Shown here: positions 21,633 to 52,394 of the stretch, one piece after another
How the letters are laid out: the number at the start of each line of letters is the position of its first letter
Position numbering within the stretch: position 1 is the stretch's first letter
Virus record (IMG/VR): IMGVR_UViG_3300032236_001613
Span: 124,001-188,000 of that record
Length of the DNA stretch: 64,000 nt
Direction: 5' to 3' (one strand)
Notes under the pieces: model-generated
Database searches by the model: none
Told to the model about the DNA's origin: nothing
The model's input: only the letters and a program-made list of their open reading frames with translations
Translations under genes and position numbers: made by a program

Positions 21633-21661
21633 ATAAAGGAGCTTCGGCTCCTTTATTTTTT
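21633..21661 (+). terminator. Intrinsic terminator after the tmRNA coding piece
   Basis: ATAAAGGAGC-TTCG-GCTCCTTTAT followed by a T run. Confidence 0.88.
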
Positions 21662-36199: not shown

Positions 36200-36720
36200 C
36201 AACTAAGGCACACTCACTGGCATAAACATAGGCACATCAATCAACGCTTAAGCTCGCACCGGCTAATTTCGGGTGCCTATGATAACCGGACAACAAAGTC
36301 GCGGGGACAGAAATCCTGTGTGTTGACAGGAACTCAGCCACTACCCCTTCAGGGATGATGATGGAATATGCCTATATAATCCGTTTGGCTAAGATAAAAA
36401 TACTAAGGCTCTTTTGATCGCGGCTCTGTGAAAAAGATACAACCGCAAATACTACATATCTGCTAACATCGGTGTGTAGCGTTCCCGTTAGATTGAAGTT
36501 AGGAATAAGAAGTACAGGCTAACCGCTTCTGCGCAGCAATGCAATTTCCGAATGTTAGTGACCAACGAACTCAGGTAATAATCGTTAGAAAATCTTCGCC
36601 CTGTTTTGGGCGAAGTATGACATTAAAATCTAGGTAATCAATTCACTCTTAATAATTTTTCTCTTTCTTATAAAAGGTGATGAGCGCGAGCGAAATCACG
36701 GGCGAATCCTTTCGCCCCTT
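36200..36720 (+). ncRNA. Candidate large structured ncRNA (family unassigned)
   Basis: About 520 nt with no ORF, more GC-rich than its flanks, many hairpins (e.g. CATAGGCAC/GTGCCTATG, TCCTGT/ACAGGA, CTTCGCCC/GGGCGAAG). Confidence 0.5.
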
Positions 36721-38639: not shown

Positions 38640-39083
38640 ATGAATAGCTTAGTAAGACAAGCACGTTTTGATACAAATACACTAAACGCTCTAAACAGAG
38701 CACTCGTAGGGTTTGATAATTTGTTTTCGCAGCATTTTGTTAATTCTGTAGAATCGAGTTATCCACCTTATAATATTTTAAAACGCGACAAGGATACTTA
38801 CGAGGTTCAGGTTGCTGTAACTGGTTTCGATTCAAAAGAGATCTCCGTTGAACTCGATCAGAATCAGTTAATTATTCGTGGAGAGGTTGAGGAAAAAGAT
38901 GACGAAAATGTACAGTACATTCATCGTGGTCTTGCTGGACGCAACTTTACCCGTGTACTGCAATTAGCAGAACATATCGAAGTTGGCGAGGTTAAGATTA
39001 AAAATGGTGTATTGCACATTGAACTTAATCACGTGATTCCCGAAGCGTTAAAGCCTCGGCTATTAAAGATTAAGTCGGAGTAA
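38640..39083 (+). CDS. Small heat-shock protein (Hsp20/IbpA family)
   Basis: SYPPYNI, YIHRGLAGRNFTR, NGVLHIEL. Confidence 0.95.
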   Translation: MNSLVRQARFDTNTLNALNRALVGFDNLFSQHFVNSVESSYPPYNILKRDKDTYEVQVAVTGFDSKEISVELDQNQLIIRGEVEEKDDENVQYIHRGLAGRNFTRVLQLAEHIEVGEVKIKNGVLHIELNHVIPEALKPRLLKIKSE

Positions 39084-39092
39084 TTTAAAACG

Positions 39093-39120
39093 GGGTAGGG
39101 AGTAATCCCTACCCTTTATT
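39093..39120 (+). terminator. Intrinsic terminator-like hairpin
   Basis: GGGTAGGGA-GTAA-TCCCTACCC followed by TTTATT. Confidence 0.75.
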
Positions 39121-39223
39121 ATGAAAATATTTCTCTCGATTTTACTTACATTAACTAGTATAATACCTGTACTAGTTTGTTACATATTAATAATTTTAGA
39201 AAACAAAAAAAACGGAGTTAATA

Positions 39224-39526
39224 ATGGGCGATACAGCCGTAGTAAGCAAAGAGACAGTTAAGAGTCGTATTAAAGAACCTAAGAAGTTTAAAGTTCTAAT
39301 ACTTAATGACGATTATACTCCTATGGATTTTGTTATTGCTATTCTTGTTACTGTTTTTAAACACCCAGAACCATCTGCTGTAAAAATTATGTTGCAAGTT
39401 CATAACGAAGGCAGTGGAGTAGCAGGTGTATATAACTACGAAATCGCAGAACAGAAAGGGATTGAAACTACCAATCTTGCCAAAGAAAACGGTTATCCAT
39501 TACAAATCAAGGTTGAACCTGTATGA
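39224..39526 (+). CDS. clpS: ATP-dependent Clp protease adaptor ClpS
   Basis: FKVLILNDDYTPMDFVI, MLQVHNEGSGVAG, YPLQ. Confidence 0.95.
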   Translation: MGDTAVVSKETVKSRIKEPKKFKVLILNDDYTPMDFVIAILVTVFKHPEPSAVKIMLQVHNEGSGVAGVYNYEIAEQKGIETTNLAKENGYPLQIKVEPV

Positions 39527-40065
39527 GTTTAAAAGATTTAACTAAAGATAGCCATACTGCTGCTGAAAAAACAAAATTCATGAAGGCAGTATTTAAAGGT
39601 ACTATGCCTTTGAATGTATGGGCAGATTGGACATATCAAAAGAGTTTATTTTATAATGCTATTGAAAGCTGCGCCGACGAATTAGATATTTTAAAAGATA
39701 TTCCAAATATTAAAAGAACTTTTTTGTTGCTTAAAGATTATAAAGAAATGGTAGCTGAGCACGTAACTCCCGCATATCGAAAAGTTACTTTAGATTATTA
39801 TCAATATATTATGAGTCTTTATCCTGATCGCGATCGTGTAATTGCACATCTTTATACATGGCATATGGGAGATTTGCACGGCGGACAAATGATTAAAAAG
39901 ATTTTGCCAGGTAGTCATAGTAATTTAGAATTTGTAGACTCTGCAACAACAATCTCTAATGTTAGAATGCTCTTAGACGACCGGCTAGCTAAAGAAGCTA
40001 ATATGGCATTTCATTGGGCAATTAGATTAATGGAAGACTATGAACCCTGGCTTGCCGGCGAATAA
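39523..40065 (+). CDS. Heme oxygenase
   Basis: LKDLTKDSHTAAE (proximal His) and HLYTWHMGDLHGGQMI distal helix. Confidence 0.9.
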   Translation: MSLKDLTKDSHTAAEKTKFMKAVFKGTMPLNVWADWTYQKSLFYNAIESCADELDILKDIPNIKRTFLLLKDYKEMVAEHVTPAYRKVTLDYYQYIMSLYPDRDRVIAHLYTWHMGDLHGGQMIKKILPGSHSNLEFVDSATTISNVRMLLDDRLAKEANMAFHWAIRLMEDYEPWLAGE

Positions 40066-40714
40066 AGTTATCGACTTTGCCGAAAAGTTTATTAGACGTC
40101 TAGAACAAAATTCTGACTGTATTAAAGAAGAACATCCGACATTAATTTGGCGTGATTACGTTTTTCATAGCGATACTTTTAGACGTGCTCACGTTAATAT
40201 AGTTGATGCCAGAGATACTAGAGGATTGTATCTTTTTCATTGTTGTATTTTTCCAAAGTTAAATGATACTAGTCCTATATTCGGGTTGGATATTATTGCC
40301 GGGGAAACTAAAATTAGCGGAGCCTTTCACGATTTTTCAAAAACAGTAGATCCTAATCATCCTATGATGTCATGGTTTGAAAATATTGTTAAAACATTAA
40401 GTTGGCGAAGGCCAAGAGAACTTCCAGAGTGGGCACAATCAATTTTTAGTCCTGCAATAATTGCTGCCGGTGCAATAAACACTGAAGAAGAAATTGATCA
40501 ATTAATTACATTCTCTCTAAATAGTTTAGATTATTATCTCGATAATGTTGGATTAACTACATTTCCAACCGGCAACTTTTCAAAAGAGCAAAATTTCTAC
40601 TGTCAGCAGCAAAAATTAAATCCTCATAATGCTCGTACTATGCAACATCTTGGACTCACTGCAGAAGAAGCAAACTATTTTGTCCAAAATGTCATGTTTC
40701 CCGAAGTTAAGTAA
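40040..40714 (+). CDS. Ferredoxin-dependent bilin reductase (PcyA/PcyX-like)
   Basis: FRRAH, FHCCIFP, PIFGLDII, RELPEWAQSIFSP, QNFYCQQQKLNPH; adjacent to the heme oxygenase. Confidence 0.88.
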   Translation: MNPGLPANKVIDFAEKFIRRLEQNSDCIKEEHPTLIWRDYVFHSDTFRRAHVNIVDARDTRGLYLFHCCIFPKLNDTSPIFGLDIIAGETKISGAFHDFSKTVDPNHPMMSWFENIVKTLSWRRPRELPEWAQSIFSPAIIAAGAINTEEEIDQLITFSLNSLDYYLDNVGLTTFPTGNFSKEQNFYCQQQKLNPHNARTMQHLGLTAEEANYFVQNVMFPEVK

Positions 40715-40786: not shown

Positions 40787-41242
40787 ATGAAACATAAATT
40801 ACTTATTTTGTTAGCATTTTATGCTACTACATCATCGGCAGCTCTACCTGACTTTTCTTTTAAAAGCCCTTCGTTTAACGGGCAAGGTTATGGATCATAC
40901 CAAGTAACCTTAGAGAACGAAGCTTACACTCGTTCACAACAGATACAGCAAGCATTAGAAGCAGCAGCACAAGCTGCTAAAAATGCTGCTGCTAATACCC
41001 CGATTAATCAATTCCTTACAAATCTTGAATCAAGAATTTACGCACAGATAGGTCAAAATCTTGCTACAGCAATGTTTGCCGGCGGGGATAAGACTAGCGG
41101 TAGTATCGATTTTCAAGGTAACACAATCTTTTGGCAGCATAATGCTACCGATATTACACTACAAGTAACAGATAGCTTGGGTAATGTAACCACAATCACT
41201 GTGCCGTTAGGTTCATTTAACATAACAGGATCGGGGGTCTGA
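40787..41242 (+). CDS. csgF: Curli assembly CsgF-like protein
   Basis: Signal peptide then FSFKSPSFNGQG..LENEA..FLTNLESRIYAQI. Confidence 0.75.
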   Translation: MKHKLLILLAFYATTSSAALPDFSFKSPSFNGQGYGSYQVTLENEAYTRSQQIQQALEAAAQAAKNAAANTPINQFLTNLESRIYAQIGQNLATAMFAGGDKTSGSIDFQGNTIFWQHNATDITLQVTDSLGNVTTITVPLGSFNITGSGV

Positions 41243-41244
41243 TA

Positions 41245-42165
41245 ATGCGATTACTGACTTTACTTGCTAGCACATTAGTGCTAACAGGCTGCGCAACCAT
41301 GCAGAGATTTGATCAACTATCGAAAATAAAATACGATCCTACTCCAATGGCAGATACTATGCAAAGAGAGTTTGACCGCATGCCTGCACCTAAGAACGGA
41401 AAAATTACTGTAGCCATTTACAATTTCCAAGATAAAACTGGACAACGTAAAACAGTACCAGGCGTAGCTAGTTTCTCTACAGCAGTAACGCAAGGTGCTG
41501 ATGCATTTTTAATACGTGCACTTCAAGAAGTAGGACACGGAGAATGGTTTGATGTTGTTGAAAGAAGTAATATTGACGACTTAACTAAAGAAAGATTAAT
41601 TATTAAACAGATGCGAGATGCATACGAAGGTAAAGATGCAGAAAAACTTATGCCATTAACCTTTGCGGGAATCATATTAGAAGGCGGTATTGTAGGATAC
41701 GATAGTAGTTTAGAATCCGGCGGTTATGCTAACAATTGGTTAGGTACTGGTAAACAAACACAATACAGTAAAGATATTGTAACTATAAGCTTACGAGCAG
41801 TATCGGTAAACACTGGCAAAGTATTAGCATCTGTTAATGTAACTAAGATAGTATTAAGTACTGCTGATAGCTTCGCAGTATTAAAGATGAAGCATGATGG
41901 AACAGCACCTTTTGAATTAGAAGGTGGAATAACAATGAACGAAGCGCCTACTATTGCTGTAAAGACTACAATAGAAGCAGCAGTAATAGAATTAATCAAA
42001 GAAGGCGAGCGTAAATCTATTTGGGATTATAAAACGACTGCACAATCTCAAATACCACAATCTGCACCGTTGGAAGGAACACCAACGATACCTGTAGGAA
42101 TGAATAAAACACCTAAGGTACCTGCGGATGTTGCAGTCAAAACTGGCGACATAAAAAACTTTTAA
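41245..42165 (+). CDS. csgG: Curli secretion channel CsgG-like lipoprotein
   Basis: Lipobox LTGC; VAIYNFQDKTGQRK, FSTAVTQG, WFDVVER, EGGIVGYD. Confidence 0.9.
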   Translation: MRLLTLLASTLVLTGCATMQRFDQLSKIKYDPTPMADTMQREFDRMPAPKNGKITVAIYNFQDKTGQRKTVPGVASFSTAVTQGADAFLIRALQEVGHGEWFDVVERSNIDDLTKERLIIKQMRDAYEGKDAEKLMPLTFAGIILEGGIVGYDSSLESGGYANNWLGTGKQTQYSKDIVTISLRAVSVNTGKVLASVNVTKIVLSTADSFAVLKMKHDGTAPFELEGGITMNEAPTIAVKTTIEAAVIELIKEGERKSIWDYKTTAQSQIPQSAPLEGTPTIPVGMNKTPKVPADVAVKTGDIKNF

Positions 42166-42174
42166 GGAGCAGAA

Positions 42175-43089
42175 ATGAAAAAGTTAAACACAATTCTTGC
42201 AAGCTTTGTGGCCGCAACGTTATTCGGTGCAGCAGCATATGCAGGAGACAACACAATTTATATTAACCAATCTGGTAATAATACTAATGTAAACATTACA
42301 CAAGATGGTGCTAGCAACGTTGTACAAGGCATTTCGAATTCAAATCCGGATGCTTTACAAAACGCAGCAATCGTTAAAGGTAATAATAACATTGTTAATA
42401 TTAGCCAAATTGGCACAGGCGATACATTAAACTTTGGTGTGCAAACTAGCACTGGAACAAAATTAATCGGGAATAGCTTTAGTTACAGCGTGACCGGCAA
42501 TAATGCTAACGCTATTATCAATAGCAACAACGACGGGTTAGGCATTAGTGCTAACAACACTATTTCTGTTAATCAAACAGGCGATTCAGCATACACCAAT
42601 ATCAACATGCTAGGCGGAGGTAACTCGTTTACTGCTGTAACTGCAGGCGGCAATGGAAATATGATTTCTGCTGTTATTAACGGTACAAATAATGTTGACA
42701 CAGTTAGCATGGTCGGTGGTGCAAGCAATAGCTTTAGCTTAGGTCAAGGTAACGCAACATCTCAAACTATGAACGGTACAGTTAATGTATCAACTAATGG
42801 TGCAACCGATAACGTTACTATTAGCCAATTTGGCGGAGCAGTAGGTGACAGTGTTACAGTCGGCGGCTACAACTCAGTAGGACTTACTACAGTTGGAGCA
42901 TTCAACGGATCTGGTAACACAATGGTTATTGCTCAAAGCGGTGTTTATGACAACGCATTGACACTTGGCGGTAACGGTAGTAGTAATGTTTTCAATGTAA
43001 CTCAATCAGCTTTGGGAGGCAACAACCTTGCTAATATCCAAAGCAATGGAAGTAGCAATACATTTAACATAACACAAACACACCGTTGA
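42175..43089 (+). CDS. Curlin-repeat (CsgA/CsgB-like) secreted protein
   Basis: Signal peptide; repeated N-x-x-x-I/V-x-Q-x-G units; Asn/Gly/Gln/Ser-rich. Confidence 0.75.
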   Translation: MKKLNTILASFVAATLFGAAAYAGDNTIYINQSGNNTNVNITQDGASNVVQGISNSNPDALQNAAIVKGNNNIVNISQIGTGDTLNFGVQTSTGTKLIGNSFSYSVTGNNANAIINSNNDGLGISANNTISVNQTGDSAYTNINMLGGGNSFTAVTAGGNGNMISAVINGTNNVDTVSMVGGASNSFSLGQGNATSQTMNGTVNVSTNGATDNVTISQFGGAVGDSVTVGGYNSVGLTTVGAFNGSGNTMVIAQSGVYDNALTLGGNGSSNVFNVTQSALGGNNLANIQSNGSSNTFNITQTHR

Positions 43090-43090
43090 T

Positions 43091-44293
43091 ATGAAAAAGA
43101 TCCTACTGACGGCTATATTAGTTTCAATATCTTTGAACTGTATAGCCTCAGTAGGTCAAATTACTGAGATGTCACAAACACCTGCAGTAATACAAAGAAA
43201 TAAATCAACACTAACAGGTATAACTGGCACTGGCGTTGAAATGGCCGACGTAGTTAATACTAAGCATGGCAAAGTTGGCATTGTATTTGAAGACGATACT
43301 AAAGTACAAGTAAGCGAAGATTCAAAACTAGTAATCGACGATTTTGTTTATGACCCCAAAGGTAAAAAACCTAACCGCCTGGCCCTTAACATGGCATCGG
43401 GTACTGTTAGGTATGCATCAGGCGTTATTGCACATAGTAATCCTAACGCTGTAAATCTACGCACTCCTACTGCAACTATTGCAGTGCGTGGAACTGATTT
43501 CACTACTACAGTAGCCGAGCTAGGCGAAAGTACAATTATATTGTTACCCAGCTGCCCTAATGCTAATCCAATAGATTACGAAGTAGAGTGCAAGACAGGT
43601 AAAATCGAAGTAATAACAGATGCAGGATCAGTTACATTAGATAAACCATTCCAAGCAACAAAAGTTTTATCTGCAAATACGTTTCCTTTAAAACCTGTTA
43701 TTCTAAAATTAAATGAAAACGCTATTAGTAACATGTTAATACTTAGTCCTCCGCCGCAGATAAAAATGGCGCAAGAGCGTGCAGAAAGAGAAACAAAAGC
43801 AGGTGCTGCAACTTCTTTAATAACAACTACTACAAAAATTGACGCAGAAAAACCCACAGTTGAAACAGCTAATGTTGTAGCAGATTGGTCAGTTGATATC
43901 GAACATCCTGTTATAGCAACAGTGTCAGTAAAATCTACAGTAATTAAAGTAGAACCTGTTACACCTAGTGCATTTTTAGATAATGAAACTTTAAATATTG
44001 TATTAGACATGGTTAGTGTACAGATTAATGCAACTCCTACTAACAATAATTCTCTAACAACTACTCCTATTAAAAATACTATTATTCCTGATTACACACC
44101 TACAAGCGGAACAGTTGCTACTATCGATACTCAACAGGTAGAAATATGCCGTACAGACTTTAGTAATAACACAGTATGCGCAATTACTCCACGAGATCAA
44201 AGCAGCATAATTACGCAAACACAAGGTACAGTTACAGTCGTAAATAGAATTAATCAAGGTGGTAATACTGTTATAACCACAAGGCAAAACTAA
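43091..44293 (+). CDS. FecR-domain periplasmic protein
   Basis: Signal peptide; IVFEDDTKVQV, LNMASGTVR, TPTATIAVRGTDF. Confidence 0.85.
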   Translation: MKKILLTAILVSISLNCIASVGQITEMSQTPAVIQRNKSTLTGITGTGVEMADVVNTKHGKVGIVFEDDTKVQVSEDSKLVIDDFVYDPKGKKPNRLALNMASGTVRYASGVIAHSNPNAVNLRTPTATIAVRGTDFTTTVAELGESTIILLPSCPNANPIDYEVECKTGKIEVITDAGSVTLDKPFQATKVLSANTFPLKPVILKLNENAISNMLILSPPPQIKMAQERAERETKAGAATSLITTTTKIDAEKPTVETANVVADWSVDIEHPVIATVSVKSTVIKVEPVTPSAFLDNETLNIVLDMVSVQINATPTNNNSLTTTPIKNTIIPDYTPTSGTVATIDTQQVEICRTDFSNNTVCAITPRDQSSIITQTQGTVTVVNRINQGGNTVITTRQN

Positions 44294-45600
44294 TGAAACA
44301 GTTTTTCTTAACTTTATTATTGTTTCTATCTAGTACAGCACTAGCTGATGTTGGAGATTTACCTGGATTAACTTATACTAGCTATTACGAAACTGCCGGA
44401 GCCACACCCACACGCTCGACTACAGCGTATCCGGTAGCTACTACAGGAGTATTAAACACTTTCTATATTCCTAGTAGTGGAAGCATGTTAGGAGCTAGTA
44501 GAACTAATATGATTATGGTGCATATTACAGGCTATATGGAAATTATGCCTACTGCTAACCTAGCTGCAGGAACTAGTGTTAATGTAACCTTTTACGATCA
44601 AAGTGACGACGGGTTCAGTTTAGCTTTAAATGGAACATATGTAATTAACAATTGGAAAGAACAAGGGTGTAGTTGTTCGGTTAACTGGAACGGAGCATCT
44701 AACTCTAATGGGTCGACTACTATGGTGGTAGGGCAATTATACGCCGTTGATGCTTGGTATTATAATAATGGTGGCGGTTACGGTATGCAGTTGTATTGGA
44801 ACGTTGGAGGTTCTATTACTAATATTCCTGCCGGTGATTTATATAGAACTATTGTAACTTACTCTAGTAGTATAACTGCAGCACAACAAACTGACGTTAC
44901 TAGATTTAATAATACATCTATTTCAGGCAATGCTATCTACATAAGACAAAGCGGTAATAATGATAAAATTACTGTGCAGCAAATCGGGTCGAATAATTTA
45001 ATTACCGGAGTTGGGCAACAATTTGCTATTGTTCAAAACGGCAATAATACTATTAATATTAAACAAGGTAATCTTAATAATTTAGGAAAAAATGAAATAG
45101 ACCTTAGTGTAGTAGGCGGAAGCAATAGTGTTGCTATAACAGAAGGATATGATACTAATGGTACTAGTGCTGGTAATAACTATCAGCTAGTAGGTATTAA
45201 CGGAATAGGAAATACTGTTACAACTAGCCAAACTAACGACGGTGGTAGTGTAGGACATTTTTTAGAGGCTGTTGTTAATGGTAATTACAATACTGTAGGA
45301 ATTATTCAAAGTAATAACACACAAAAGCAGATATTTGCCAGCATCACAGGAAATAATAATACTATTACTACTAGCCAAACAGGTACAGGACAACATTATC
45401 TTAATATAACAGAAACCGGAAACGGCAATAGTGCTGTAGTTAATCAAAGCGGTAATACTAATAATGCTGCTACCATAGTACTAAATAATCAAGGAGCACC
45501 TGCGAGTGTTAATCTAACCCAAACAGGAGGTCAGGTTTACAGTATAACGCAAACATGCGTAACCACTTGCGGCACTGTTACTGTTAAGCAAGGACCTTAA
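44293..45600 (+). CDS. PA14-like domain plus curlin-repeat secreted protein
   Basis: Signal peptide; HITGYM..SDDGFSLALNGTYVINNW..WYYNNGGG (PA14-like); C-terminal curlin repeats. Confidence 0.7.
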   Translation: MKQFFLTLLLFLSSTALADVGDLPGLTYTSYYETAGATPTRSTTAYPVATTGVLNTFYIPSSGSMLGASRTNMIMVHITGYMEIMPTANLAAGTSVNVTFYDQSDDGFSLALNGTYVINNWKEQGCSCSVNWNGASNSNGSTTMVVGQLYAVDAWYYNNGGGYGMQLYWNVGGSITNIPAGDLYRTIVTYSSSITAAQQTDVTRFNNTSISGNAIYIRQSGNNDKITVQQIGSNNLITGVGQQFAIVQNGNNTINIKQGNLNNLGKNEIDLSVVGGSNSVAITEGYDTNGTSAGNNYQLVGINGIGNTVTTSQTNDGGSVGHFLEAVVNGNYNTVGIIQSNNTQKQIFASITGNNNTITTSQTGTGQHYLNITETGNGNSAVVNQSGNTNNAATIVLNNQGAPASVNLTQTGGQVYSITQTCVTTCGTVTVKQGP

Positions 45601-47628
45601 ATGTTTAAAAAAATTCTGTTGAGTCCGTGGACTGCACTACTTACACTTTTTTTAGTAGTTGCTGTTAGAGTGGTCGATCCTAGCTTTGTTGAAAGTGTGC
45701 GCCTTAGATATTTTGATACTTTAATTACAAATAAAGCATCTACGGCTAATAATATTTTTACTGTTAATATTGACGAAGCTGCATTAGATCGTTACGGTCA
45801 ATGGCCATTACCTCGCAACGTATATGCTGACATTATACAAGATTTGTATAATCGTCATGCAGGATTAGTTGTATTAGATGTTGTAATGTCTGAAAAAGAT
45901 CGTATGGGCGGCGATTCTGCATTAGCTGATATGATGAAACAGTATCCAGTAGTATTAGCTAACATTCCAGCAGAAAAAACTAAAAACGATCCGCGTGCAC
46001 CCGGAAGTGCAGTAATGGGTGCAGATCATTTAGATCGTATTGTACAATATCCGGGACTAATTGCTAATATTCCTGCATTAGAAGAAAATGCTGTAGGTAT
46101 AGGCAGTGTAAACACTATGCCAGAAATTGATGGAGTTAATCGTCGTGTACCTTTAATTGCTGCAATTAACGGAAAACTATACCCGTCATTAGCCATGGAA
46201 GCACTACGTGTTGCAGGTAATGATACTACATTTCAAGTTAAGCTTAACGAAAATGGTGTAGAGAAAATGCGTATACCTGCATTCGGACCTATCGCAACAG
46301 ATAGCCTAGGACGCATTTGGGTTGACTGGAGTCAACAAAATCGACAGATTTCTATAACAGATTTACCTAAAGACTTTAATGGTGCTGTAGTTATAGTAGG
46401 CCCTACTGCTGCAGGTATTGCTAATCCTGTTCCGACTTCTCGAGGCGCGGTTTATCCTCAAGATATGCAAGCTGCAGTATTAGGTACAATGATAAATGGC
46501 GTAACAATACAAAGACCCGATTATGCAGACGGACTAGAAATCGTTGCTATTTTATTAGCAAGTGTTATACTGTTAATTCTAACAAGGTGGGTTTATGCAG
46601 GATTGGCGGCAGTCGTTATTTTACTGGGTTCAGGAGCTTTTGGCAGTTATTATCTTTTTAGCCATTACCTTTGGCTTTTTGATGCTAGTGCTTTTGTTGC
46701 TGCGATCGTCCTTGTGTCACTCCATGCCTATGGAGTTAAATTCGTTAGTGAATATTTGCAGAAGCAACAAATAAAGAAACAGTTTGGCACATACTTGAGT
46801 CCGGCAATGGTTGAAAAATTACAAAAAAATCCCGAACTATTAAAGTTGGGCGGTGAATCACGCGAACTTAGTATTATGTTTACGGACGTTCGAGGATTTA
46901 CAGGAATTAGCGAACACTATGGCAAGGATGTACAGGGACTTACTAAGATTATGAATCGCTATATGACTGCCATGACTGCAAAAATCATAGAGAATGAAGG
47001 TACACTAGATAAGTACATTGGTGATGCACAAATGGCATTCTGGAACGCACCGTTAGACGATGCTGCCCACGCTAAACATGCTGTAAAAACTGCATTAGCT
47101 ATGTTAAAAGATTTGGAGAATTTTAATGCAGAAATCGCTAAAGAAGGTGTTCCAGAGTTTGGAATGGGGCTTGGCATTAACACTGATACTGTCGTGGTTG
47201 GCAATATGGGGAGTAGTCAGCGTTTTGATTATACTTGTCTTGGGGACGGCGTTAATCTTGCGAGTCGTTTGGAAGGACAAAGTAAGCCCTATGGTGTCAA
47301 GATTATTCTCGGGCCGAAAACAGCAGAATATGTAATGGACGAATATCCTTTAATCGAATTAGATTTAATTGCTGTTAAAGGTAAAAAAGAACCTGTTAAG
47401 ATCTATACTGTAGCACCGATTGACGATGCTATGGCTTGGCTATTACACGAAAAGTTCTTAGATGCCTACAGAGACGGTATGTGGGTAGGTGCACGTTTCT
47501 ATGCTGAAGAATTGCGTGACAAAGGATGGAATGGCGAGATGTACAAGTATTACGAAATGATGCTAGAGCGTATGCAAGGAGAAGTTCCGTTAGATTGGGA
47601 CGGTGTATTTAGAGCCACTAGCAAATAA
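45601..47628 (+). CDS. CHASE2-domain class III adenylate/guanylate cyclase
   Basis: YGQWPLPR, DGVNRR (CHASE2); transmembrane helices; MFTDVRGFT, DKYIGDAQMAFW, GDGVNLASRLE. Confidence 0.93.
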   Translation: MFKKILLSPWTALLTLFLVVAVRVVDPSFVESVRLRYFDTLITNKASTANNIFTVNIDEAALDRYGQWPLPRNVYADIIQDLYNRHAGLVVLDVVMSEKDRMGGDSALADMMKQYPVVLANIPAEKTKNDPRAPGSAVMGADHLDRIVQYPGLIANIPALEENAVGIGSVNTMPEIDGVNRRVPLIAAINGKLYPSLAMEALRVAGNDTTFQVKLNENGVEKMRIPAFGPIATDSLGRIWVDWSQQNRQISITDLPKDFNGAVVIVGPTAAGIANPVPTSRGAVYPQDMQAAVLGTMINGVTIQRPDYADGLEIVAILLASVILLILTRWVYAGLAAVVILLGSGAFGSYYLFSHYLWLFDASAFVAAIVLVSLHAYGVKFVSEYLQKQQIKKQFGTYLSPAMVEKLQKNPELLKLGGESRELSIMFTDVRGFTGISEHYGKDVQGLTKIMNRYMTAMTAKIIENEGTLDKYIGDAQMAFWNAPLDDAAHAKHAVKTALAMLKDLENFNAEIAKEGVPEFGMGLGINTDTVVVGNMGSSQRFDYTCLGDGVNLASRLEGQSKPYGVKIILGPKTAEYVMDEYPLIELDLIAVKGKKEPVKIYTVAPIDDAMAWLLHEKFLDAYRDGMWVGARFYAEELRDKGWNGEMYKYYEMMLERMQGEVPLDWDGVFRATSK

Positions 47629-47630
47629 TA

Positions 47631-47954
47631 TTACCAAGGCAATGGAGTTGTTATCACCGGATTTATTAATGAAGATATCTTACTTTGCACTGTAGATTCT
47701 GTAGATACTTTGTCGATATTATTCCACACCCATCCTAAAACAATATCCGGAGTCAATAAATCGTATGGTATATAAGTATCAGGTTGGTAAGCAATATTAC
47801 ACGATCCTTCATGATCGGCACTAACTGTGTTACCATTGTTATCTGTATCAATACCGTAGCAATTCCAGTAAACAGTATAAACAATATTTGGACGATCGCC
47901 TATTAAAGGAAAAGATTCCATACTTCTAATAATCCAATTAAATGTCGCAGCCAT
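47631..47954 (-). CDS. Hypothetical phage protein
   Basis: 107 aa with YIPYDLLT..VLGWV and TTPLPW, common near tail-fibre genes. Confidence 0.5.
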   Translation of the reverse strand: MAATFNWIIRSMESFPLIGDRPNIVYTVYWNCYGIDTDNNGNTVSADHEGSCNIAYQPDTYIPYDLLTPDIVLGWVWNNIDKVSTESTVQSKISSLINPVITTPLPW

Positions 47955-47965
47955 AATTAACTACC

Positions 47966-48289
47966 TTATGATTCACCAGCCGATGCTGTATTGTCGTCTT
48001 CCGACTTCTTAATTTTATTTATTGTCTGCTCAGCTTCAACTCGTTCTCTCTCAATGGTTTTTCCACGTAAATGTAGAACAGTAGTTACTTTTTGATTTAA
48101 TCTAATTAAATCGTTATCGAGCATACGTATACGATCTATTAATGCAATAAGAACAGTATTTGATTCGCTTAATACTGGCTTAATTTCTTTGGTAGCCCAC
48201 TCCCATACATAATAGATTAAATATCCCATACCTCCTGCAGCTACAACAGGAAACCCATACTTATTAATTAAATCAACAACGTCAGACAT
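47966..48289 (-). CDS. Small membrane protein (paralog of 49609-49890)
   Basis: LINKYGFPVVAAGGMGY...DRIRMLDNDLIRL. Confidence 0.6.
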   Translation of the reverse strand: MSDVVDLINKYGFPVVAAGGMGYLIYYVWEWATKEIKPVLSESNTVLIALIDRIRMLDNDLIRLNQKVTTVLHLRGKTIERERVEAEQTINKIKKSEDDNTASAGES

Positions 48290-48484: not shown

Positions 48485-49543
48485 CTACTCTCCGGAAAAG
48501 ATAGAAACCCATAGTTTTTGGGTTTCTTTGGTATATTTAGTTAAATTTCGCTGATTTAACATAACGTTAACACTGGGATTTAGATAAGTACGGTGTATGA
48601 TATCAGCTATCTGATCGCTATCTGTAGGATCGCAGTTAAAAAATCTAGTTGACCAAGGTATTTCTTTAGATCCAACAATAGGTACACCTTGACTAATTAA
48701 ATCGGCACTTACAATATTAAATGTTTCGCTAAAATTACATTGTAAACCAATATCCATATCAGCACAAATTTTGAGAAACTCTTCTCTAGGAGTCCATTCG
48801 TGTATTATTAATTGGTGTCCTTGATCGTTAAGATGTTGAAATAATGCTTTTAGATTATTCATTACAGGATCGCCCTTCATTTCGATGCGCCCGCCATTGA
48901 TATGAAATCTTAATTGTTTACCAATTTGATTAGCAAATTTTAAAGCAGCGAACGCTTGTAATAAATGATTTTTTAACGGACGAACTGCTCCAAAGCACGC
49001 AATGTCTACCCAATATTTGTTATTATTATATTTTTTAATTTTATAATCTGATGGGTAATAATTTGGCATATAAAAAACTCTTTGTTTAGTTTCTTCGTCG
49101 GACCACTGTTGTGTTGTTTTTAAGTATTCTCTAATTTCTCCTAACATCCTCGGAGCATTAATTCCTATATCGATGTTATTATATGTTACATAATCACCAA
49201 TCCAGTTCATAGCCATACCTTCGCCGGCCATAAAAGGCATTTCGCTATGTAATCTAATAATCCATCTCACCTTAGGGTGTAATTTATTAAGAACTGCAAA
49301 TTTTGTAGGTACTACCCAAAGTGCTTCGATAATAACATGAGTAGGACGGTGTTTTGTTACTAAACGATCAATGCAATTATTATCTATCGCTACTTCTAAC
49401 GCAGATTCAATTCCTGCATTTAGTAACATCTCGTGCATAAAATTAGCCGAATTATACAATCCTGTACTAAGGCCTATAGGACTATGGGCAATAGGATTAT
49501 AGTCCTCTCGTCTTTTGAGAATGAATAATACTTTTTTTGACAT
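48485..49543 (-). CDS. Glycosyltransferase (GT-B/GT4-like)
   Basis: RPLKNH, SETFNIVSADLISQGVPIVGS. Confidence 0.75.
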   Translation of the reverse strand: MSKKVLFILKRREDYNPIAHSPIGLSTGLYNSANFMHEMLLNAGIESALEVAIDNNCIDRLVTKHRPTHVIIEALWVVPTKFAVLNKLHPKVRWIIRLHSEMPFMAGEGMAMNWIGDYVTYNNIDIGINAPRMLGEIREYLKTTQQWSDEETKQRVFYMPNYYPSDYKIKKYNNNKYWVDIACFGAVRPLKNHLLQAFAALKFANQIGKQLRFHINGGRIEMKGDPVMNNLKALFQHLNDQGHQLIIHEWTPREEFLKICADMDIGLQCNFSETFNIVSADLISQGVPIVGSKEIPWSTRFFNCDPTDSDQIADIIHRTYLNPSVNVMLNQRNLTKYTKETQKLWVSIFSGE

Positions 49544-49568
49544 TGGAAATCTCTCGTTTATGTACCGA

Positions 49569-49576
49569 TATTTATA
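49569..49576 (-). promoter_or_regulatory. T4-like late promoter TATAAATA (minus strand)
   Basis: TATTTATA on the plus strand, upstream of the 49543 start. Confidence 0.5.
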
Positions 49577-49608
49577 TACGTATATATTAAATATTTGTTA
49601 CTTTGGAA

Positions 49609-49890
49609 TCAATCTCTTCTAGCATCATTTTTGCCATCGGCTCTAGCAATACGGTCAACATCGGGTCTTAAGCCAAGAGCATTTGAAACAATTGTGTCTA
49701 TTCTAATAACATCATGATTCATAGTTTTAACACGATTATCGAGAGCAGTAATTATACCTTTCATACCATTAACGCTACTAGTAACTCCAGCTAAGATAAA
49801 TTTTAATGTTAGAAATACAAAATAACCACCGGCACACGCTGCTGCTATCGGAAAACCTAACTGTGCTACTAAATTAAAAAATTGATCCAT
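49609..49890 (-). CDS. Small membrane protein (paralog of 47966-48289)
   Basis: LVAQLGFPIAAACAGGY...DNRVKTMNHDVIRI; AGGAG SD. Confidence 0.6.
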   Translation of the reverse strand: MDQFFNLVAQLGFPIAAACAGGYFVFLTLKFILAGVTSSVNGMKGIITALDNRVKTMNHDVIRIDTIVSNALGLRPDVDRIARADGKNDARRD

Positions 49891-49936
49891 AACTGCTCCT
49901 TATAATATATTTAAAAAGAAGCAGTTATAGGTAATA

Positions 49937-50398
49937 CTAGCCGTTAACTATTTTTTTAATTTTTTCTACATAATCACTGCATATTCCGTAACAATTTGTA
50001 TTGAGATCTTTAAACTCCAAATCATGCCATTCGGGCAACACACTAATACTTATACTAGTTAATTCTTTACCAGGAAAAGTCCATATAAAATTATTACTTG
50101 TAAGAACAAAGTCATCATTTTGATGCCAAAAGTATTTGTAAATTGTAGTAGAAGTTAGCCAACGTAATGCTGCTAAATTTTTAGCATGTATCCAAAGACT
50201 TAAGTTATTATTTTTTAAAAAGTCTTCTTTAATTAAGTACTGGGGGTTGTCGTGCCCTAACCACAATTCTGAATTAACAATCCATAAATCAATTTCGCAA
50301 TCGTAACCTTGATTAATTGCATCGAGTATTTGTTTAGGATCATTTTCTATTTGTTTATTAGGACCTTGAGTAAGTCCTCTATGTGCTATTAATTTCAT
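49937..50398 (-). CDS. Glycerophosphodiester phosphodiesterase-like protein
   Basis: LIAHRG, EN, CEIDLW, LGHD, GICSDY. Confidence 0.75.
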   Translation of the reverse strand: MKLIAHRGLTQGPNKQIENDPKQILDAINQGYDCEIDLWIVNSELWLGHDNPQYLIKEDFLKNNNLSLWIHAKNLAALRWLTSTTIYKYFWHQNDDFVLTSNNFIWTFPGKELTSISISVLPEWHDLEFKDLNTNCYGICSDYVEKIKKIVNG

Positions 50399-50400
50399 TT

Positions 50401-51021
50401 TTATCTCTTTTTAAAATAAACGTTTACTTCGTTTGCCCACATATCGTTGCTTAGAATTCCTGTAATTTCGAATCCTTTGCTAATTAAAAAATCTACCATT
50501 TCTTGTATGGTATGATTTTCTTTATATAATTTTACATCATTGTCACGAGCACATTCGACTACGCCCTCTTTTATTAGATGTACTAAATCACCCATGCCTT
50601 GTAGAACTTTTAGATCAGTACCTTGAGTATCACAATGAAAATAATCTATTTTATCGATATTAATTTTATTAAGTTGATACCATGTATCAAATCTTAAAAC
50701 TTGAACTTGAATTTTATGAGTTACTTTAAAATCTTCTCTACCCGGCCATGTTTGATTTAAATTATCAGAAAATGTATTAAGAGAGCTACACCCCCAATTT
50801 TCTTGCCCTGCAACATTAAATTGAGCTATACCATTAAAGTCGCTTAATGCAACAGGTATTACATGATATCGATCTGAATAAGTTTTACTTTTTTCATTTA
50901 AATGAACAACCATTTCTGGCGTTGGTTCAAATGCCCATGTTATTATATTTTGATCACTCTGTGTTCTACTTAAACTATCATCTCCCCAATTCGCACCAAT
51001 GTCAAATAAAATGTATGTCAT
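50401..51021 (-). CDS. FkbM-family methyltransferase
   Basis: FDIGANWG, AFEP, VALSD, HCDTQGTD. Confidence 0.85.
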   Translation of the reverse strand: MTYILFDIGANWGDDSLSRTQSDQNIITWAFEPTPEMVVHLNEKSKTYSDRYHVIPVALSDFNGIAQFNVAGQENWGCSSLNTFSDNLNQTWPGREDFKVTHKIQVQVLRFDTWYQLNKINIDKIDYFHCDTQGTDLKVLQGMGDLVHLIKEGVVECARDNDVKLYKENHTIQEMVDFLISKGFEITGILSNDMWANEVNVYFKKR

Positions 51022-52394
51022 ATATTTTTTCTTTTATTAGTTAAAAAATGATTCAAATCTTCCGGAGTTCCTATTCCCCACATATTTTCTACCTGCTTAA
51101 TTCTTATTTTTTTACCATCTGCAATAGCTTCGTTATATACCGGACATACATAAAATTCGTTATTAACTCTAATATTTTTGTTAATCATCGATTCTGCATA
51201 TCTAACATAATCAGACCCTTTACTCCAATAGTAAATTCCTACAGTAGCATTATTACTAATAACCTTTTTCTCTGCAACTTCTGCAACAAACCCATCGTCG
51301 CCTATACGTGCATAACTCCATTTAGGATGATGTGCATTAAATGTTAATATACCTCCGTCAATATTTTCTGCTGAAAATGCATAAACGCATTCATTGCTAT
51401 TCCACTCAATATATTGATCGCTATTAGCAATTATTAGTGGTTCGTTATTGTTTATAAATTCTTTAGCAAGTAAAGTAGTACAAGCTGCTCCTTCGGTAAT
51501 TCCGTCTATTTGTACAATGTCACAATTAGGAGCAATTAGATTTAATAGATATTTAAGATTATATTTCTCATAATGATCTTTTTGTACTATAAAAATGTAA
51601 TGTGCTTCTATGTTTAAATTATCTACTACTACTTCGATCATAGGTTTTCCTTCGACTTCGATCAAAGGTTTAGGAAATGTATATCCTGCTTGAGCAAATC
51701 GACTACCAGCTCCGGCCATAGGAATTAACACATTCATTTTTTTATTTCTCCAAGGAATTTTTTTATGTGCGACTCCATTTAAAATATCAACAGCCTCGTT
51801 AATTTTATCTTCCGTTAAATCAAAACTATCTTTTACAGGTAAAAGATGAGCTCCGCTATCTATAGCACCTTGTCGACCTATATGACTGTCTTCAATAATT
51901 ACAGTATTTTTGGGTAAACAATTCATTGCAGTCATACATTTCCAATACATTTCAGGAAATGGTTTAGTTCTTTTTACATCTTCGTTACTTACAAAATAGT
52001 CTACATAAGGTAAAACGCCAATACTAATTAATGATAGCTTAACTGTTTCTCTAATGCTATTACTAGCAACTGCAATTTTAATTCCTTGAGAAGATAGATT
52101 AGAAAAGATTTTAATTAATTTCTCGTCTTTAGGAAAGTTACGTATAAGATCAAGAGTAGCAAGTTGCTTATCTTGCCAAACTTGATTAAATAGATTTCTA
52201 TTTAATCCTTTCTTCTCGGAAAGCAATTCTAATTTACGTGTAGTATTAAGTCCATCGTATATGCTTAAATGCTCTTCTCTCGAAATTACATATTCTGTGC
52301 CGACTTTTTCTAATGCAGTATTAAGTGCATTGTAATGTAGTTCTCTACTTTCAATTAATACTCCGTCGAGGTCAAATATGATCAGTTTATTCAT
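51018..52394 (-). CDS. HAD phosphatase fused to a sugar nucleotidyltransferase-like domain
   Basis: IFDLDGVL, KPFPEMY, IEDS; then LIPMAGAGSRF..PKPLI, EKKVIS, GIGTPEDL. Confidence 0.88.
   Translation of the reverse strand: MNKLIIFDLDGVLIESRELHYNALNTALEKVGTEYVISREEHLSIYDGLNTTRKLELLSEKKGLNRNLFNQVWQDKQLATLDLIRNFPKDEKLIKIFSNLSSQGIKIAVASNSIRETVKLSLISIGVLPYVDYFVSNEDVKRTKPFPEMYWKCMTAMNCLPKNTVIIEDSHIGRQGAIDSGAHLLPVKDSFDLTEDKINEAVDILNGVAHKKIPWRNKKMNVLIPMAGAGSRFAQAGYTFPKPLIEVEGKPMIEVVVDNLNIEAHYIFIVQKDHYEKYNLKYLLNLIAPNCDIVQIDGITEGAACTTLLAKEFINNNEPLIIANSDQYIEWNSNECVYAFSAENIDGGILTFNAHHPKWSYARIGDDGFVAEVAEKKVISNNATVGIYYWSKGSDYVRYAESMINKNIRVNNEFYVCPVYNEAIADGKKIRIKQVENMWGIGTPEDLNHFLTNKRKNI

What the first reader, a model, noticed from the sequence alone, without database searches (positions are those of the whole stretch)
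40787..47628. Curli-like secretion module physically coupled to a FecR protein and a CHASE2 adenylate cyclase
Seen: six contiguous co-oriented genes, csgF-like, csgG, curlin-repeat, FecR-domain, PA14+curlin, and CHASE2 class III cyclase. No csgE, csgC or csgD is recognisable. Established: CsgG/CsgF export curli amyloid subunits; csgF/csgG have been reported in SAR11 myophages; FecR and CHASE2 are periplasmic signalling domains. Inference: amyloid export is wired to trans-envelope cNMP signalling, so surface fibre assembly or contact could set cAMP levels in the infected cell (aggregation, superinfection exclusion, catabolite rewiring).
Basis: partly seen in the sequence, partly recalled or inferred. 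Interest (0 to 1): 0.65.

Follow-up and report, generated by a model that had tools for sequence, protein, structure and literature searches.

The report
Phage curli module with receptor cyclase
A 328-kb phage carries a tightly packed six-gene operon for a curli-type amyloid export pore, two curlin-repeat fibre proteins, a periplasmic FecR-like protein and a membrane receptor adenylate cyclase; the same module was already described in marine SAR11 and OM43 phages in 2022, so this is a new member rather than a new system.

Summary
Six co-oriented, almost abutting genes at 40787-47628 encode CsgF, CsgG, a curlin-repeat protein, a secreted FecR-domain protein, a PA14+curlin fusion and a CHASE2 class IIIb adenylate cyclase. 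No CsgE or CsgC was found in the 328-kb phage genome; CsgD was not searched.

The linkage is not chance. In 43 related phage loci with at least 7 kb on both sides of the cyclase, CsgF and CsgG lie within 9 kb in 39 and FecR in 40. Two of the exceptions have CsgG 13-16 kb away on the same contig.

The module is not new. Wittmers et al. 2022 (PMC9599517) described CsgF-CsgG-CsgA/B-FecR-second CsgA/B-adenylate cyclase in pelagiphages. Melnitz and HTVC008M carry it.

This work adds five points:
- The cyclase sensor is CHASE2.
- FecR+CHASE2 is a recurrent bacterial pair that occurs without curli genes, so FecR need not be an iron regulator here.
- A six-gene version (second curlin without PA14) sits as an island in two Caulobacteraceae genomes.
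- Two small membrane proteins always accompany the module.
- This copy is in a jumbo phage, probably from fresh water.

That secretion or fibre state sets cAMP remains an inference from synteny. The complex prediction could not be run.

The parts
40787..41242 (+). CsgF-like secreted protein (151 aa). It has a signal peptide and a conserved mature N-terminus, F25-x2-P28-x-F30-x-G32-x-G34-Y35.
   Evidence: Pfam PF10614, E 5e-13, covering 6-132 of 132 positions; phrog_35372, E 1.5e-47. The N-terminal motif residues are each kept in 54-64 of 65 phage homologues. In E. coli the N-terminal 27 residues of mature CsgF line the CsgG lumen (PMC7304575).
41245..42165 (+). CsgG outer-membrane lipoprotein channel (306 aa), lipobox L-T-G-C16.
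   Evidence: PF03783, E 2e-40. It matches NCBIfam's E. coli CsgG model at E 7e-45, but at 153.6 bits is below that model's 505-bit equivalog cut-off. E. coli CsgG structures 3x2r/6l7a match at E 1.7e-42 over residues 2-269. Cys16 is present in 65 of 65 phage homologues. The E. coli constriction residues Y66/N70/F71 align to V71/S76/F77.
42175..43089 (+). Curlin-repeat subunit 1 (304 aa): signal peptide followed by an N/G/T/S-rich beta-solenoid.
   Evidence: 17 of 22 homologues match Pfam Curlin_rpt. Weak Curlin_rpt repeats lie at window 42244-42306 and 43015-43080. The model has pLDDT 78.8 and is all strand-turn-strand. Best structural match is Pontibacter CsgA 8c50_A, Z 21.7, 236 residues aligned, 20% identity.
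43091..44293 (+). Secreted FecR-domain protein (400 aa). It has only an N-terminal signal sequence, a conserved FecR-fold domain at about residues 20-225, a variable linker, and a small C-terminal beta domain.
   Evidence: PF04773, E 7e-9; phrog_37870, E 5e-94. Only one hydrophobic segment, residues 1-24. Structural matches: Z 10.9 to PupR CCSSD 6ovk_R, 10.2 to 5ix9, 10.0 to 4m0h, then 4.8. The N-terminal 225 residues are conserved across 28 phage homologues.
44293..45600 (+). Curlin-repeat subunit 2 with an N-terminal PA14 head (435 aa, signal peptide).
   Evidence: PA14 PF07691, E 4.6e-7, 30.2 bits against a cut-off of 24. RsgI3 PA14 structure matches at E 4.6e-4. Curlin_rpt repeats at window 44929-45006, 45349-45390 and 45415-45468 sum to 24.4 bits, above the cut-off. 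The curlin-1 HMM hits it at E 1e-16. In the family, Curlin_rpt is found in 15 of 26 members and PA14 in only 4 of 26.
45601..47628 (+). Receptor adenylate cyclase (675 aa). Layout: TM1, periplasmic CHASE2, three TM helices, class IIIb cyclase domain, then a conserved tail of about 100 residues.
   Evidence: CHASE2 PF05226, E 2e-40; Guanylate_cyc, E 1e-18. Hydrophobic segments at 2-31 and 307-383. It aligns to adenylate cyclases CyaC 1wc0/1wc1 and CyaB 3r5g at E 1e-28. D429, K471, D475, T545, N552 and R556 are all present. Mean column identity is 68% across 25 phage homologues.
47966..48289 (-). Small membrane protein (107 aa): N-terminal hydrophobic helix then coiled coil. It is a constant companion of the module.
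   Evidence: phrog_18771, E 1e-31; no Pfam family. The family is present in 43 of 43 informative loci, usually as a pair directly upstream of csgF or downstream of the cyclase. The Atlas neighbours are all viral hypothetical proteins.
49609..49890 (-). Paralogue of the small membrane protein (93 aa, TM helix 11-37).
   Evidence: The family HMM hits it at E 2e-40. Its homologues lie next to the first paralogue in most loci. Hydrophobic segment shown.

Best explanation
This is a copy of the viral type VIII secretion (curli) module already described in marine pelagiphages. Here it sits as one translationally coupled operon in a 328-kb T4-like phage.

Shown from sequence and structure models:
- The operon encodes a CsgG lipoprotein channel.
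- CsgF has the conserved N-terminal segment that in E. coli lines the CsgG lumen.
- Two signal-peptide-bearing curlin-repeat beta-solenoid proteins are present, the second with a PA14 head.
- A soluble periplasmic protein has the FecR/PupR signalling-domain fold.
- An inner-membrane receptor cyclase has a periplasmic CHASE2 sensor and an intact class IIIb adenylate-cyclase site.

Inferred: during infection the host Sec and Lol machineries place CsgG/CsgF in the outer membrane, and the two curlins are exported and polymerise on the cell surface. The FecR-like protein works with CHASE2, as FecR-CHASE2 pairs do in bacteria, to convert a periplasmic or envelope cue into cAMP synthesis. That cue may be the state of the secretion channel or of unsecreted curlin. 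Host factors would have to read the cAMP, because no PF00027 cNMP-binding domain was found in the phage genome. FecR here is a protein-interaction and sensor module, not an iron regulator.
For: Domain and fold assignments.

Operon packing, with gaps of 2, 9, 1, -1 and 0 bases.

Conserved linkage:
- 64 of 80 related phage loci hold CsgF+CsgG+FecR with the cyclase.
- Among 43 loci with at least 7 kb on both sides, the counts are CsgF 39, CsgG 39, FecR 40, curlin 40.
- Linkage survives inversion of the CsgF-FecR block in about 9 loci.
- Linkage survives separation by 13-16 kb in two contigs.

The same gene order occurs in the isolates Melnitz and HTVC008M.

The module is published, with expression in metatranscriptomes (PMC9599517).

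All module-linked cyclases form one clade with 100% SH-aLRT support, sister to bacterial CHASE2 cyclases.

FecR-CHASE2 pairing without curli genes:
- At least 11 of about 75 bacterial homologues have a FecR-domain ORF directly adjacent. None has CsgG or CsgF within 10 kb.
- The Burkholderia LysM-FecR + CHASE2 kinase operon (PMC5192318).
- S. meliloti has FecR-domain SMc02177 among the targets of the cAMP regulator Clr (PMC5498481). That cyaD1 lies beside it is my recollection, not in the passages read.

S. meliloti CHASE2 cyclases raise cAMP on a protein signal sensed through the outer-membrane barrel NsrA (PMC13001267).

The closest solved structure to the FecR domain is PupR bound to the periplasmic domain of an outer-membrane protein.
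Against:
- No amyloid or secretion assay exists for any viral copy. Buchholz et al. saw no clumping of Melnitz-infected cells.
- The window's own curlin 1 does not reach the Pfam threshold.
- The CsgG constriction keeps only one of the three E. coli residues.
- CsgE is absent, so gating is unexplained.
- The published podophage versions often lack the cyclase while keeping FecR. FecR may therefore serve the secretion system rather than the cyclase.
- No PF00027 cNMP-binding domain or PycTM effector was found in the phage genome, and the host is unknown.
- The transition-state Asn is replaced by Ser in 7 of 25 phage cyclases.
Confidence: 0.55

Rival explanations
1. FecR is a periplasmic accessory of the secretion system itself, for example a stand-in for the missing CsgE cap or adaptor. 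The CHASE2 cyclase is then an independent cAMP-raising host-takeover gene that merely travels with the module.
For: FecR tracks CsgF/CsgG: it is present in 40 of 43 informative loci, and absent from the three loci that lack the CsgF-CsgG block within 9 kb. In published podophage modules FecR always follows the curli genes, while the cyclase is only 'frequently' present. CsgE is not found. FecR-fold domains bind periplasmic parts of outer-membrane proteins (6ovk).
Against: FecR-domain proteins sit directly beside CHASE2 transducers in many bacteria that have no curli genes. In myophages the cyclase stays in the same genome even when displaced. The bacterial island keeps FecR and the cyclase overlapping.
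Confidence: 0.2
2. CsgG/CsgF have been repurposed as a gated pore. Proposed roles are lysis timing in the manner of a pinholin or secretin (Buchholz 2022) or uptake of large solutes or cofactors (Zaragoza-Solas 2020, Wittmers 2022). The curlin-like proteins do not form fibres.
For: No clumping was seen in Melnitz infections. The E. coli Tyr ring of the constriction (Y66) is not kept, while the Phe ring stays Phe or Leu. CsgE is absent.
Against: Two secreted curlin-repeat proteins are conserved beside the pore in 40 of 43 loci, with a CsgA-like solenoid fold. The CsgF segment that binds CsgG is conserved. CsgF is needed for fibre nucleation rather than for pore assembly (quoting the literature). 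None of these fits a bare pore.
Confidence: 0.15
3. FecR acts as an iron-responsive regulator, so the module ties curli production to iron availability (suggested by Wittmers 2022).
For: The family name; iron limitation matters in the surface ocean.
Against: The protein has only a signal peptide. It lacks the cytoplasmic anti-sigma domain and membrane anchor of FecR proper. Its nearest family models are Leptospira LipL45/Lsa33-type secreted FecR-domain proteins. FecR-domain proteins pair with CHASE2 sensors in operons unrelated to iron.
Confidence: 0.05

Closest known systems
Viral T8SS (curli) module of pelagiphages (Wittmers et al. 2022, PMC9599517; Zaragoza-Solas et al. 2020, PMC7029224; Melnitz, PMC9004378)
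   Same: Same gene set and order: one or two small upstream or downstream genes, then CsgF, CsgG, CsgA/B-like, FecR, a second CsgA/B-like, and an adenylate cyclase. Same lack of CsgE and CsgC; CsgD was not searched here.
   Different: - This copy lies in a 328-kb phage genome, not one of about 140-150 kb.
- Its cyclase falls in a large clade of uncultured phages apart from the Melnitz/HTVC008M clade, at about 40% identity.
- Related sequences turn up in freshwater metagenomes.
- The second curlin has a PA14 head, which only 4 of 26 relatives share.
- The small companion genes, probably those the paper calls 'HK' (judged by position only), show no kinase domain here.
Curli system of Escherichia coli (csgBAC-csgDEFG)
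   Same: CsgG aligns over its full length with its lipobox. CsgF family and N-terminal segment are present. The subunits are curlin-repeat beta-solenoids.
   Different: - No CsgE or CsgC was found; CsgD was not searched.
- Constriction is V/S/F instead of Y/N/F.
- Subunits are two to three times longer than the five-repeat CsgA (E. coli CsgA architecture is from my own knowledge), and one carries PA14.
- FecR and a receptor cyclase are inserted in the operon.
- The module is encoded by a virus.
FecR-domain protein + CHASE2 transducer pairs of bacteria (Burkholderia BiofilmReg operon, PMC5192318; S. meliloti CyaD1 system with outer-membrane NsrA, PMC5498481 and PMC13001267)
   Same: A secreted FecR-domain protein is encoded beside a TM-CHASE2-3TM transducer. 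In S. meliloti the output is cAMP, and signal perception needs an outer-membrane beta-barrel protein.
   Different: The bacterial pairs have no CsgG, CsgF or curlins within 10 kb. The Burkholderia output is a histidine kinase. Bacterial FecR partners are often giant multidomain proteins or carry LysM.
Six-gene island in two Caulobacteraceae genomes (L089 and L180)
   Same: CsgF, CsgG, two curlins, FecR and a CHASE2 cyclase in the same order. CsgG is up to 65% and FecR 50% identical to phage versions.
   Different: - It is chromosomal, at 50-55% G+C.
- Its flanks are bacterial genes that differ between the two genomes.
- There are no small membrane companions.
- One copy is followed by a PycTM-family gene.
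- Its cyclase groups with a phage-like contig, so the direction of transfer is open.

Membership tests
Curli / type VIII secretion system | CsgG-family outer-membrane lipoprotein channel | tested here: met
   PF03783, E 2e-40. Full-length alignment to E. coli CsgG structures, E 1.7e-42. The lipobox Cys is invariant in 65 of 65.
Curli / type VIII secretion system | CsgG constriction ring Tyr66/Asn70/Phe71 (E. coli numbering) | tested here: not met
   These align to V71/S76/F77. Across 65 phage CsgGs the Phe position is F or L, and the other two vary. This feature is defined for the enterobacterial protein only.
Curli / type VIII secretion system | CsgF with an N-terminal segment that plugs CsgG | tested here: met
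   PF10614, E 5e-13, full length. The mature N-terminal F-x2-P-x-F-x-G-x-G-Y motif has each residue kept in 54-64 of 65. Binding itself was not tested.
Curli / type VIII secretion system | Secreted curlin-repeat subunits (CsgA/CsgB type) | tested here: met
   Curlin_rpt is found in 17 of 22 and 15 of 26 homologues of the two genes. ORF5 passes the family cut-off on summed repeats. The ORF3 model is closest to CsgA 8c50, Z 21.7. Both proteins have signal peptides.
Curli / type VIII secretion system | Accessory genes CsgE, CsgC and regulator CsgD | tested here: not met
   PF10627 and PF10610 were not found in the 328-kb genome, with E. coli positive as control. CsgD was not searched. These genes are also absent from alphaproteobacterial curli operons according to PMC9599517.
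Curli / type VIII secretion system | CsgG-dependent export and amyloid polymerisation | not testable with these tools
   Needs Congo red or ThT binding, EM, or a secretion assay.
FecR-type anti-sigma factor (ferric citrate signalling) | Periplasmic FecR domain | tested here: met
   PF04773, E 7e-9. The fold matches PupR CCSSD, Z 10.9, rmsd 3.1, 137 residues aligned.
FecR-type anti-sigma factor (ferric citrate signalling) | Cytoplasmic anti-sigma domain and single membrane anchor; partner ECF sigma and TonB-dependent transducer | tested here: not met
   The FecR domain starts about 25 residues after an N-terminal signal sequence, leaving no room for a cytoplasmic domain. ECF sigma and TonB-transducer genes were not searched in the phage genome.
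FecR-domain + CHASE2 sensor pair | CHASE2 domain between TM1 and a three-helix membrane block, with a FecR-domain gene adjacent | tested here: met
   PF05226, E 2e-40, residues 16-324, flanked by hydrophobic segments 2-31 and 307-383. FecR is one gene upstream. The pairing recurs in bacteria.
FecR-domain + CHASE2 sensor pair | Physical or functional interaction of the two proteins | not tested
To my knowledge no published structure exists.
Class III adenylate cyclase, subclass IIIb | Two metal-binding Asp, adenine-specifying Lys and Thr, transition-state Asn and Arg | tested here: met
   D429, D475, K471, T545, N552 and R556 by alignment to CyaC 1wc0/1wc1 and CyaB 3r5g. The roles of these residues and the IIIb assignment come from my own knowledge of CyaC. 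Among 25 phage homologues, T/D occurs in 18/7 and N/S in 18/7.
Class III adenylate cyclase, subclass IIIb | cAMP synthesis | not testable with these tools
   Needs an enzyme assay or a cya complementation test.
Viral T8SS module of pelagiphages | Gene content and order CsgF-CsgG-curlin-FecR-(curlin)-(cyclase) on a phage genome | tested here: met
Viral T8SS module of pelagiphages | Host is Pelagibacter (SAR11), marine | tested here: inconclusive
   The host is unknown. The only public runs with related sequence outside the source study are labelled as freshwater metagenomes, and they cover only the conserved cyclase part. The window also holds a beta-type tmRNA and a Polynucleobacter-1 RNA.

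The most novel reading that the evidence does not exclude
The FecR-fold protein physically bridges the phage-made CsgG/CsgF channel (or unsecreted curlin) and the CHASE2 domain. The infected cell's cAMP level would then report whether the surface fibre machinery is working or engaged. This would be a virus-encoded trans-envelope signalling device, with the two small membrane proteins as further parts of it.
Probability: 0.2. Interest if true: 0.7.

Novelty: new member of a known kind. Interest (0 to 1): 0.35.

Why it matters
Curli modules are among the largest auxiliary gene sets of abundant aquatic phages, and their function has not been tested. CHASE2 is one of the commonest bacterial sensor domains without a known ligand or mechanism.

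A compact, strongly conserved phage operon joins a FecR-fold protein, a CHASE2 cyclase and an outer-membrane secretion channel. Two cultured phage-host pairs carry it (Melnitz/OM43 and HTVC008M/SAR11). This gives a tractable system for two questions: what FecR-CHASE2 pairs sense, and whether phages remodel the host surface and second-messenger state together.

As a discovery in itself it is incremental, because the module was published in 2022.

Tried and rejected
**Attempts that failed or gave little**
Nothing can be said about binding.
- phmmer of the two curlins against PDB sequences gave no CsgA hit. Foldseek gave only weak beta-helix matches, with CsgA at rank 49. Only VIA-align separated CsgA from generic beta-helices.
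- phmmer of CsgF against PDB sequences found nothing useful.

**Leads checked and dropped**
- PF00027 cNMP-binding and PycTM domains were sought in the phage genome; none was found.
- A PycTM-family gene lies beside the cyclase in bacterial L089 and beside a distant CHASE2 cyclase in L181. It is absent from L180, from all phage loci and from the other bacterial loci, so it is not treated as part of the system.
- The 'histidine kinase' label that PMC9599517 gives to small genes at the same position, probably these companion genes, is not supported. They have no Pfam family, about 100 residues, one TM helix plus a coiled coil, and only viral hypothetical neighbours in the Atlas.
- Seven 'bacterial' MAG contigs with cyclase matches (L084-L088, L090, L161; six hold other module genes too) share further genes with phage loci. 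They are taken as phage contigs binned into MAGs.
- Three loci seemed to have the cyclase without the secretion genes. Two have CsgG 13-16 kb away on the same contig, and the third is a fragment rated 5% complete.

**Searches not run**
- The large protein searches were not used, because family scans settled every gene.

Full report
**What is there**

The window is part of a 328,068-bp virus record rated 92% complete. Its genes are typical of T4-like aquatic myophages: ribonucleotide reductase and tail fibre genes, plus Hsp20, ClpS, heme oxygenase and bilin reductase.

At 40787-47628 six ORFs lie on the + strand with gaps of 2, 9, 1, -1 and 0 bases. They form one translationally coupled operon. 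A simple scan finds no promoter or terminator signal above background inside it. Family scans give:
- CsgF, PF10614, E 5e-13.
- CsgG, PF03783, E 2e-40.
- No family for the third gene.
- FecR, PF04773, E 7e-9.
- PA14, PF07691, E 5e-7.
- CHASE2 at E 2e-40 plus a class III cyclase domain at E 1e-18.

**The two curlins**

The third gene does not reach Pfam's Curlin_rpt threshold on its own. Other evidence supports it:
- 17 of 22 phage homologues match Curlin_rpt, best E 6e-17.
- The genome-wide Curlin_rpt search finds weak repeats only inside this gene and the fifth gene.
- Its AlphaFold model (pLDDT 78.8, all strand-turn-strand) is closest to the solved curli subunit CsgA of Pontibacter. The match is Z 21.7, 236 residues aligned and 20% identity, against Z 16.7 for generic beta-helices.

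The fifth gene passes the Curlin_rpt cut-off on summed repeats, 24.4 bits, and is hit by the curlin-1 profile at E 1e-16. Both proteins start with signal peptides. In the second-curlin family, Curlin_rpt is found in 15 of 26 members and PA14 in only 4 of 26. The N-terminal head is therefore variable.

**The secretion pair**

CsgG aligns with E. coli CsgG structures from the lipobox to the C-terminus, E 1.7e-42. The lipobox cysteine is invariant in 65 phage homologues. The three constriction residues of E. coli, Tyr66, Asn70 and Phe71 (PMC7304575), align to Val, Ser and Phe. Only the Phe position is kept in the family, as Phe or Leu.

In CsgF, each residue of the mature N-terminal motif F-x2-P-x-F-x-G-x-G-Y is kept in 54-64 of 65 homologues. 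In E. coli the N-terminal 27 residues line the CsgG lumen.

CsgE and CsgC were not found anywhere in the genome, with E. coli positive as control.

**The signalling pair**

The FecR protein has a single N-terminal hydrophobic segment, a signal sequence, and no room for a cytoplasmic anti-sigma domain. Its first roughly 225 residues are conserved and the rest is variable.

The model is only moderately confident (pLDDT 61). Even so, residues 20-220 match the PupR cell-surface signalling domain at Z 10.9, a 'cell surface anchoring domain' (5ix9) at Z 10.2, and a Bacteroides FecR-type protein at Z 10.0. The next entry scores 4.8.

The cyclase has TM1, CHASE2, three further TM helices and a catalytic domain. 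The catalytic domain aligns with the adenylate cyclases CyaC and CyaB at E 1e-28. All six canonical residues are present: D429, D475, K471, T545, N552 and R556. The Thr marks subclass IIIb.

The whole protein, CHASE2 included, is strongly conserved among phages, with mean column identity 68%.

**Is the linkage real?**

The cyclase has at least 551 relatives in IMG/VR. In the best 80 loci, profile searches recover CsgF+CsgG+FecR beside the cyclase in 64. Among the 43 loci with at least 7 kb on both sides:
- CsgF and CsgG are present in 39.
- FecR is present in 40.
- A curlin is present in 40.

In about nine loci the CsgF-to-FecR block is inverted or lies on the other side of the cyclase, yet stays within 9 kb. 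Of three loci without the block, two have CsgG 13-16 kb away on the same contig. The third is a fragment rated 5% complete.

A family of small membrane proteins of about 100 residues, usually two paralogues, is present in 43 of 43 informative loci. The pair lies directly upstream of csgF or downstream of the cyclase. The window has both copies, at 47966-48289 and 49609-49890 on the minus strand.

**Prior art**

The cultured phages Melnitz (OM43 host) and HTVC008M (SAR11 host) carry the same six genes in the same order. GenBank annotates them as CsgF, CsgG, curlin repeat protein, FecR domain protein, curlin repeat protein and adenylate/guanylate cyclase.

Zaragoza-Solas et al. 2020 described the cluster and proposed 'sibling capture'. 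Buchholz et al. 2022 discussed only CsgG/F and proposed a lysis-timing pore.

Wittmers et al. 2022 explicitly described the module as HK, CsgF, CsgG, CsgA/B, FecR, a second CsgA/B and an adenylate cyclase, in podo- and myophages of SAR11. They reported its expression in metatranscriptomes and its global distribution. They discussed aggregation, superinfection exclusion and import as possible roles.

**What this analysis adds**

1. The sensor of the cyclase is CHASE2. A full-text search for CHASE2 together with FecR did not return the phage papers.

2. FecR plus CHASE2 is a recurrent bacterial pairing that does not depend on curli genes.
   - The closest bacterial homologues of the cyclase, at 33-39% identity, are in Hyphomicrobiales, Rhizobiaceae, Kiloniellaceae, SAR86 and Woeseiaceae.
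   - None of them has CsgG or CsgF within 10 kb. At least 11 of about 75 have a FecR-domain ORF directly adjacent, often a giant protein.
   - The literature gives a LysM-FecR + CHASE2-kinase operon that controls biofilm in Burkholderia.
   - It also gives the FecR-domain gene smc02177, a target of the cAMP regulator Clr in S. meliloti. That it lies beside the CHASE2 cyclase gene cyaD1 is my recollection.
   - The S. meliloti CHASE2 cyclases respond to a protein signal through the outer-membrane barrel NsrA.
   - This makes an iron-regulator reading of the phage FecR unlikely. It also gives a precedent for signalling from the outer membrane to a CHASE2 cyclase.

3. A six-gene version of the module (its second curlin has no PA14 head) exists in bacteria. 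Two Caulobacteraceae genomes carry CsgF-CsgG-curlin-curlin-FecR-cyclase at 83-96% mutual identity. The island has about 52% G+C against 56-69% in most flanking sequence, the flanking genes are bacterial, and they differ between the two genomes.
   - In the cyclase tree all module-linked cyclases form one clade with 100% support, sister to bacterial CHASE2 cyclases.
   - The bacterial island groups with a phage-like contig. The direction of transfer is open.

4. Seven other 'bacterial' MAG contigs with cyclase matches (six of them hold other module genes too) share further genes with phage loci. They are probably phage contigs binned into MAGs.

5. Small genes at the same position, probably these companion genes, are labelled HK in the literature; the ones here show no kinase domain.

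6. This copy sits in a 328-kb genome and in a cyclase clade distinct from Melnitz/HTVC008M.
   - Outside the source study, the only public runs with related sequence are labelled as freshwater metagenomes. They cover only the conserved cyclase end at 90-95% identity, so the habitat is suggested rather than shown.

**Mechanism**

Shown: the parts list, the export signals, an intact cyclase active site, and strong conservation of linkage.

Inferred: CsgG/CsgF assemble in the host outer membrane and export the two curlins. The second curlin, with its variable head, acts as an adhesin-bearing or nucleating subunit. FecR and CHASE2 form a periplasmic sensing unit that drives cAMP synthesis.

The attractive idea is that FecR links the secretion channel, or unsecreted curlin, to CHASE2. 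It rests on three things: gene linkage, the PupR-PupB precedent, and the NsrA-CHASE2 precedent.

Evidence against an obligatory link:
- Published podophage modules keep FecR but often lack the cyclase.
- No PF00027 cNMP-binding domain was found in the phage genome.
- No infected-cell phenotype has been seen.

The planned complex prediction could not be run.

**Verdict**

This is a new member of a known viral module, with some added clarity on the signalling half. Interest is moderate to low as a discovery. It is higher as an experimental handle on CHASE2 and FecR.

Noticed in passing
window 21211-21658 (+): A permuted (two-piece) tmRNA gene: RF04321 at 120 bits, also matching the betaproteobacterial tmRNA model RF01850 at 89 bits. 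Melnitz also carries a two-piece tmRNA.
   Followed up: no
window 36251-36391 (+): A full-length match to the Polynucleobacter-1 RNA motif, RF01718, 91 bits. Together with the beta-type tmRNA and the freshwater-metagenome relatives, it hints at a freshwater betaproteobacterial host.
   Followed up: partly
window 38640-40714 (+): Hsp20, ClpS, heme oxygenase and a ferredoxin-dependent bilin reductase lie directly upstream of csgF. The heme oxygenase + bilin reductase pair also precedes the module in L003, L059, L063 and L081.
   Followed up: no
window 47631-47954 (-) and 48485-52394 (-): Between and beyond the two small membrane genes lie four further genes: a DUF7936 protein, a weak GT1-like glycosyltransferase, an FkbM methyltransferase, and a HAD-nucleotidyltransferase fusion. 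Together they look like a sugar-modification cluster next to the surface module.
   Followed up: no
L037:17428-17781, L051:2386-2742, L035:1571-1945 and seven other phage loci: Stand-alone proteins of about 117 residues are homologous to the C-terminal tail of the cyclase (profile positions 567-667). They sit next to the module in 10 phage loci. No stand-alone copy was found in the window's own genome.
   Followed up: partly
L089:12494-13087 and L181:7861-8427: A PycTM-family (Pycsar effector, PF18967) membrane protein lies next to CHASE2 cyclases in two different Caulobacteraceae genomes. It was not found in the other loci or in phages.
   Followed up: partly
L084, L085, L086, L087, L088, L090, L161: Contigs filed under Bacteroidota, Verrucomicrobiota, Rhodobacteraceae, Legionellales and Pirellulales MAGs carry the phage-type cyclase; six of them hold other module genes, and all seven share further genes with phage loci. 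They are probably phage contigs binned into MAGs.
   Followed up: partly
L092:2294-9862, L112:3-9944, L135:4549-9717 and similar: Giant ORFs of 1,500-3,300 residues containing a FecR domain lie directly beside the CHASE2 cyclase in many alphaproteobacterial genomes.
   Followed up: no
phage record OR851715.1 (Salmonella phage S.Kent 1-2-1, 1,499 bp): A 1.5-kb record labelled as a phage holds a CsgG match at 39% identity. It is probably a fragment of host DNA.
   Followed up: no
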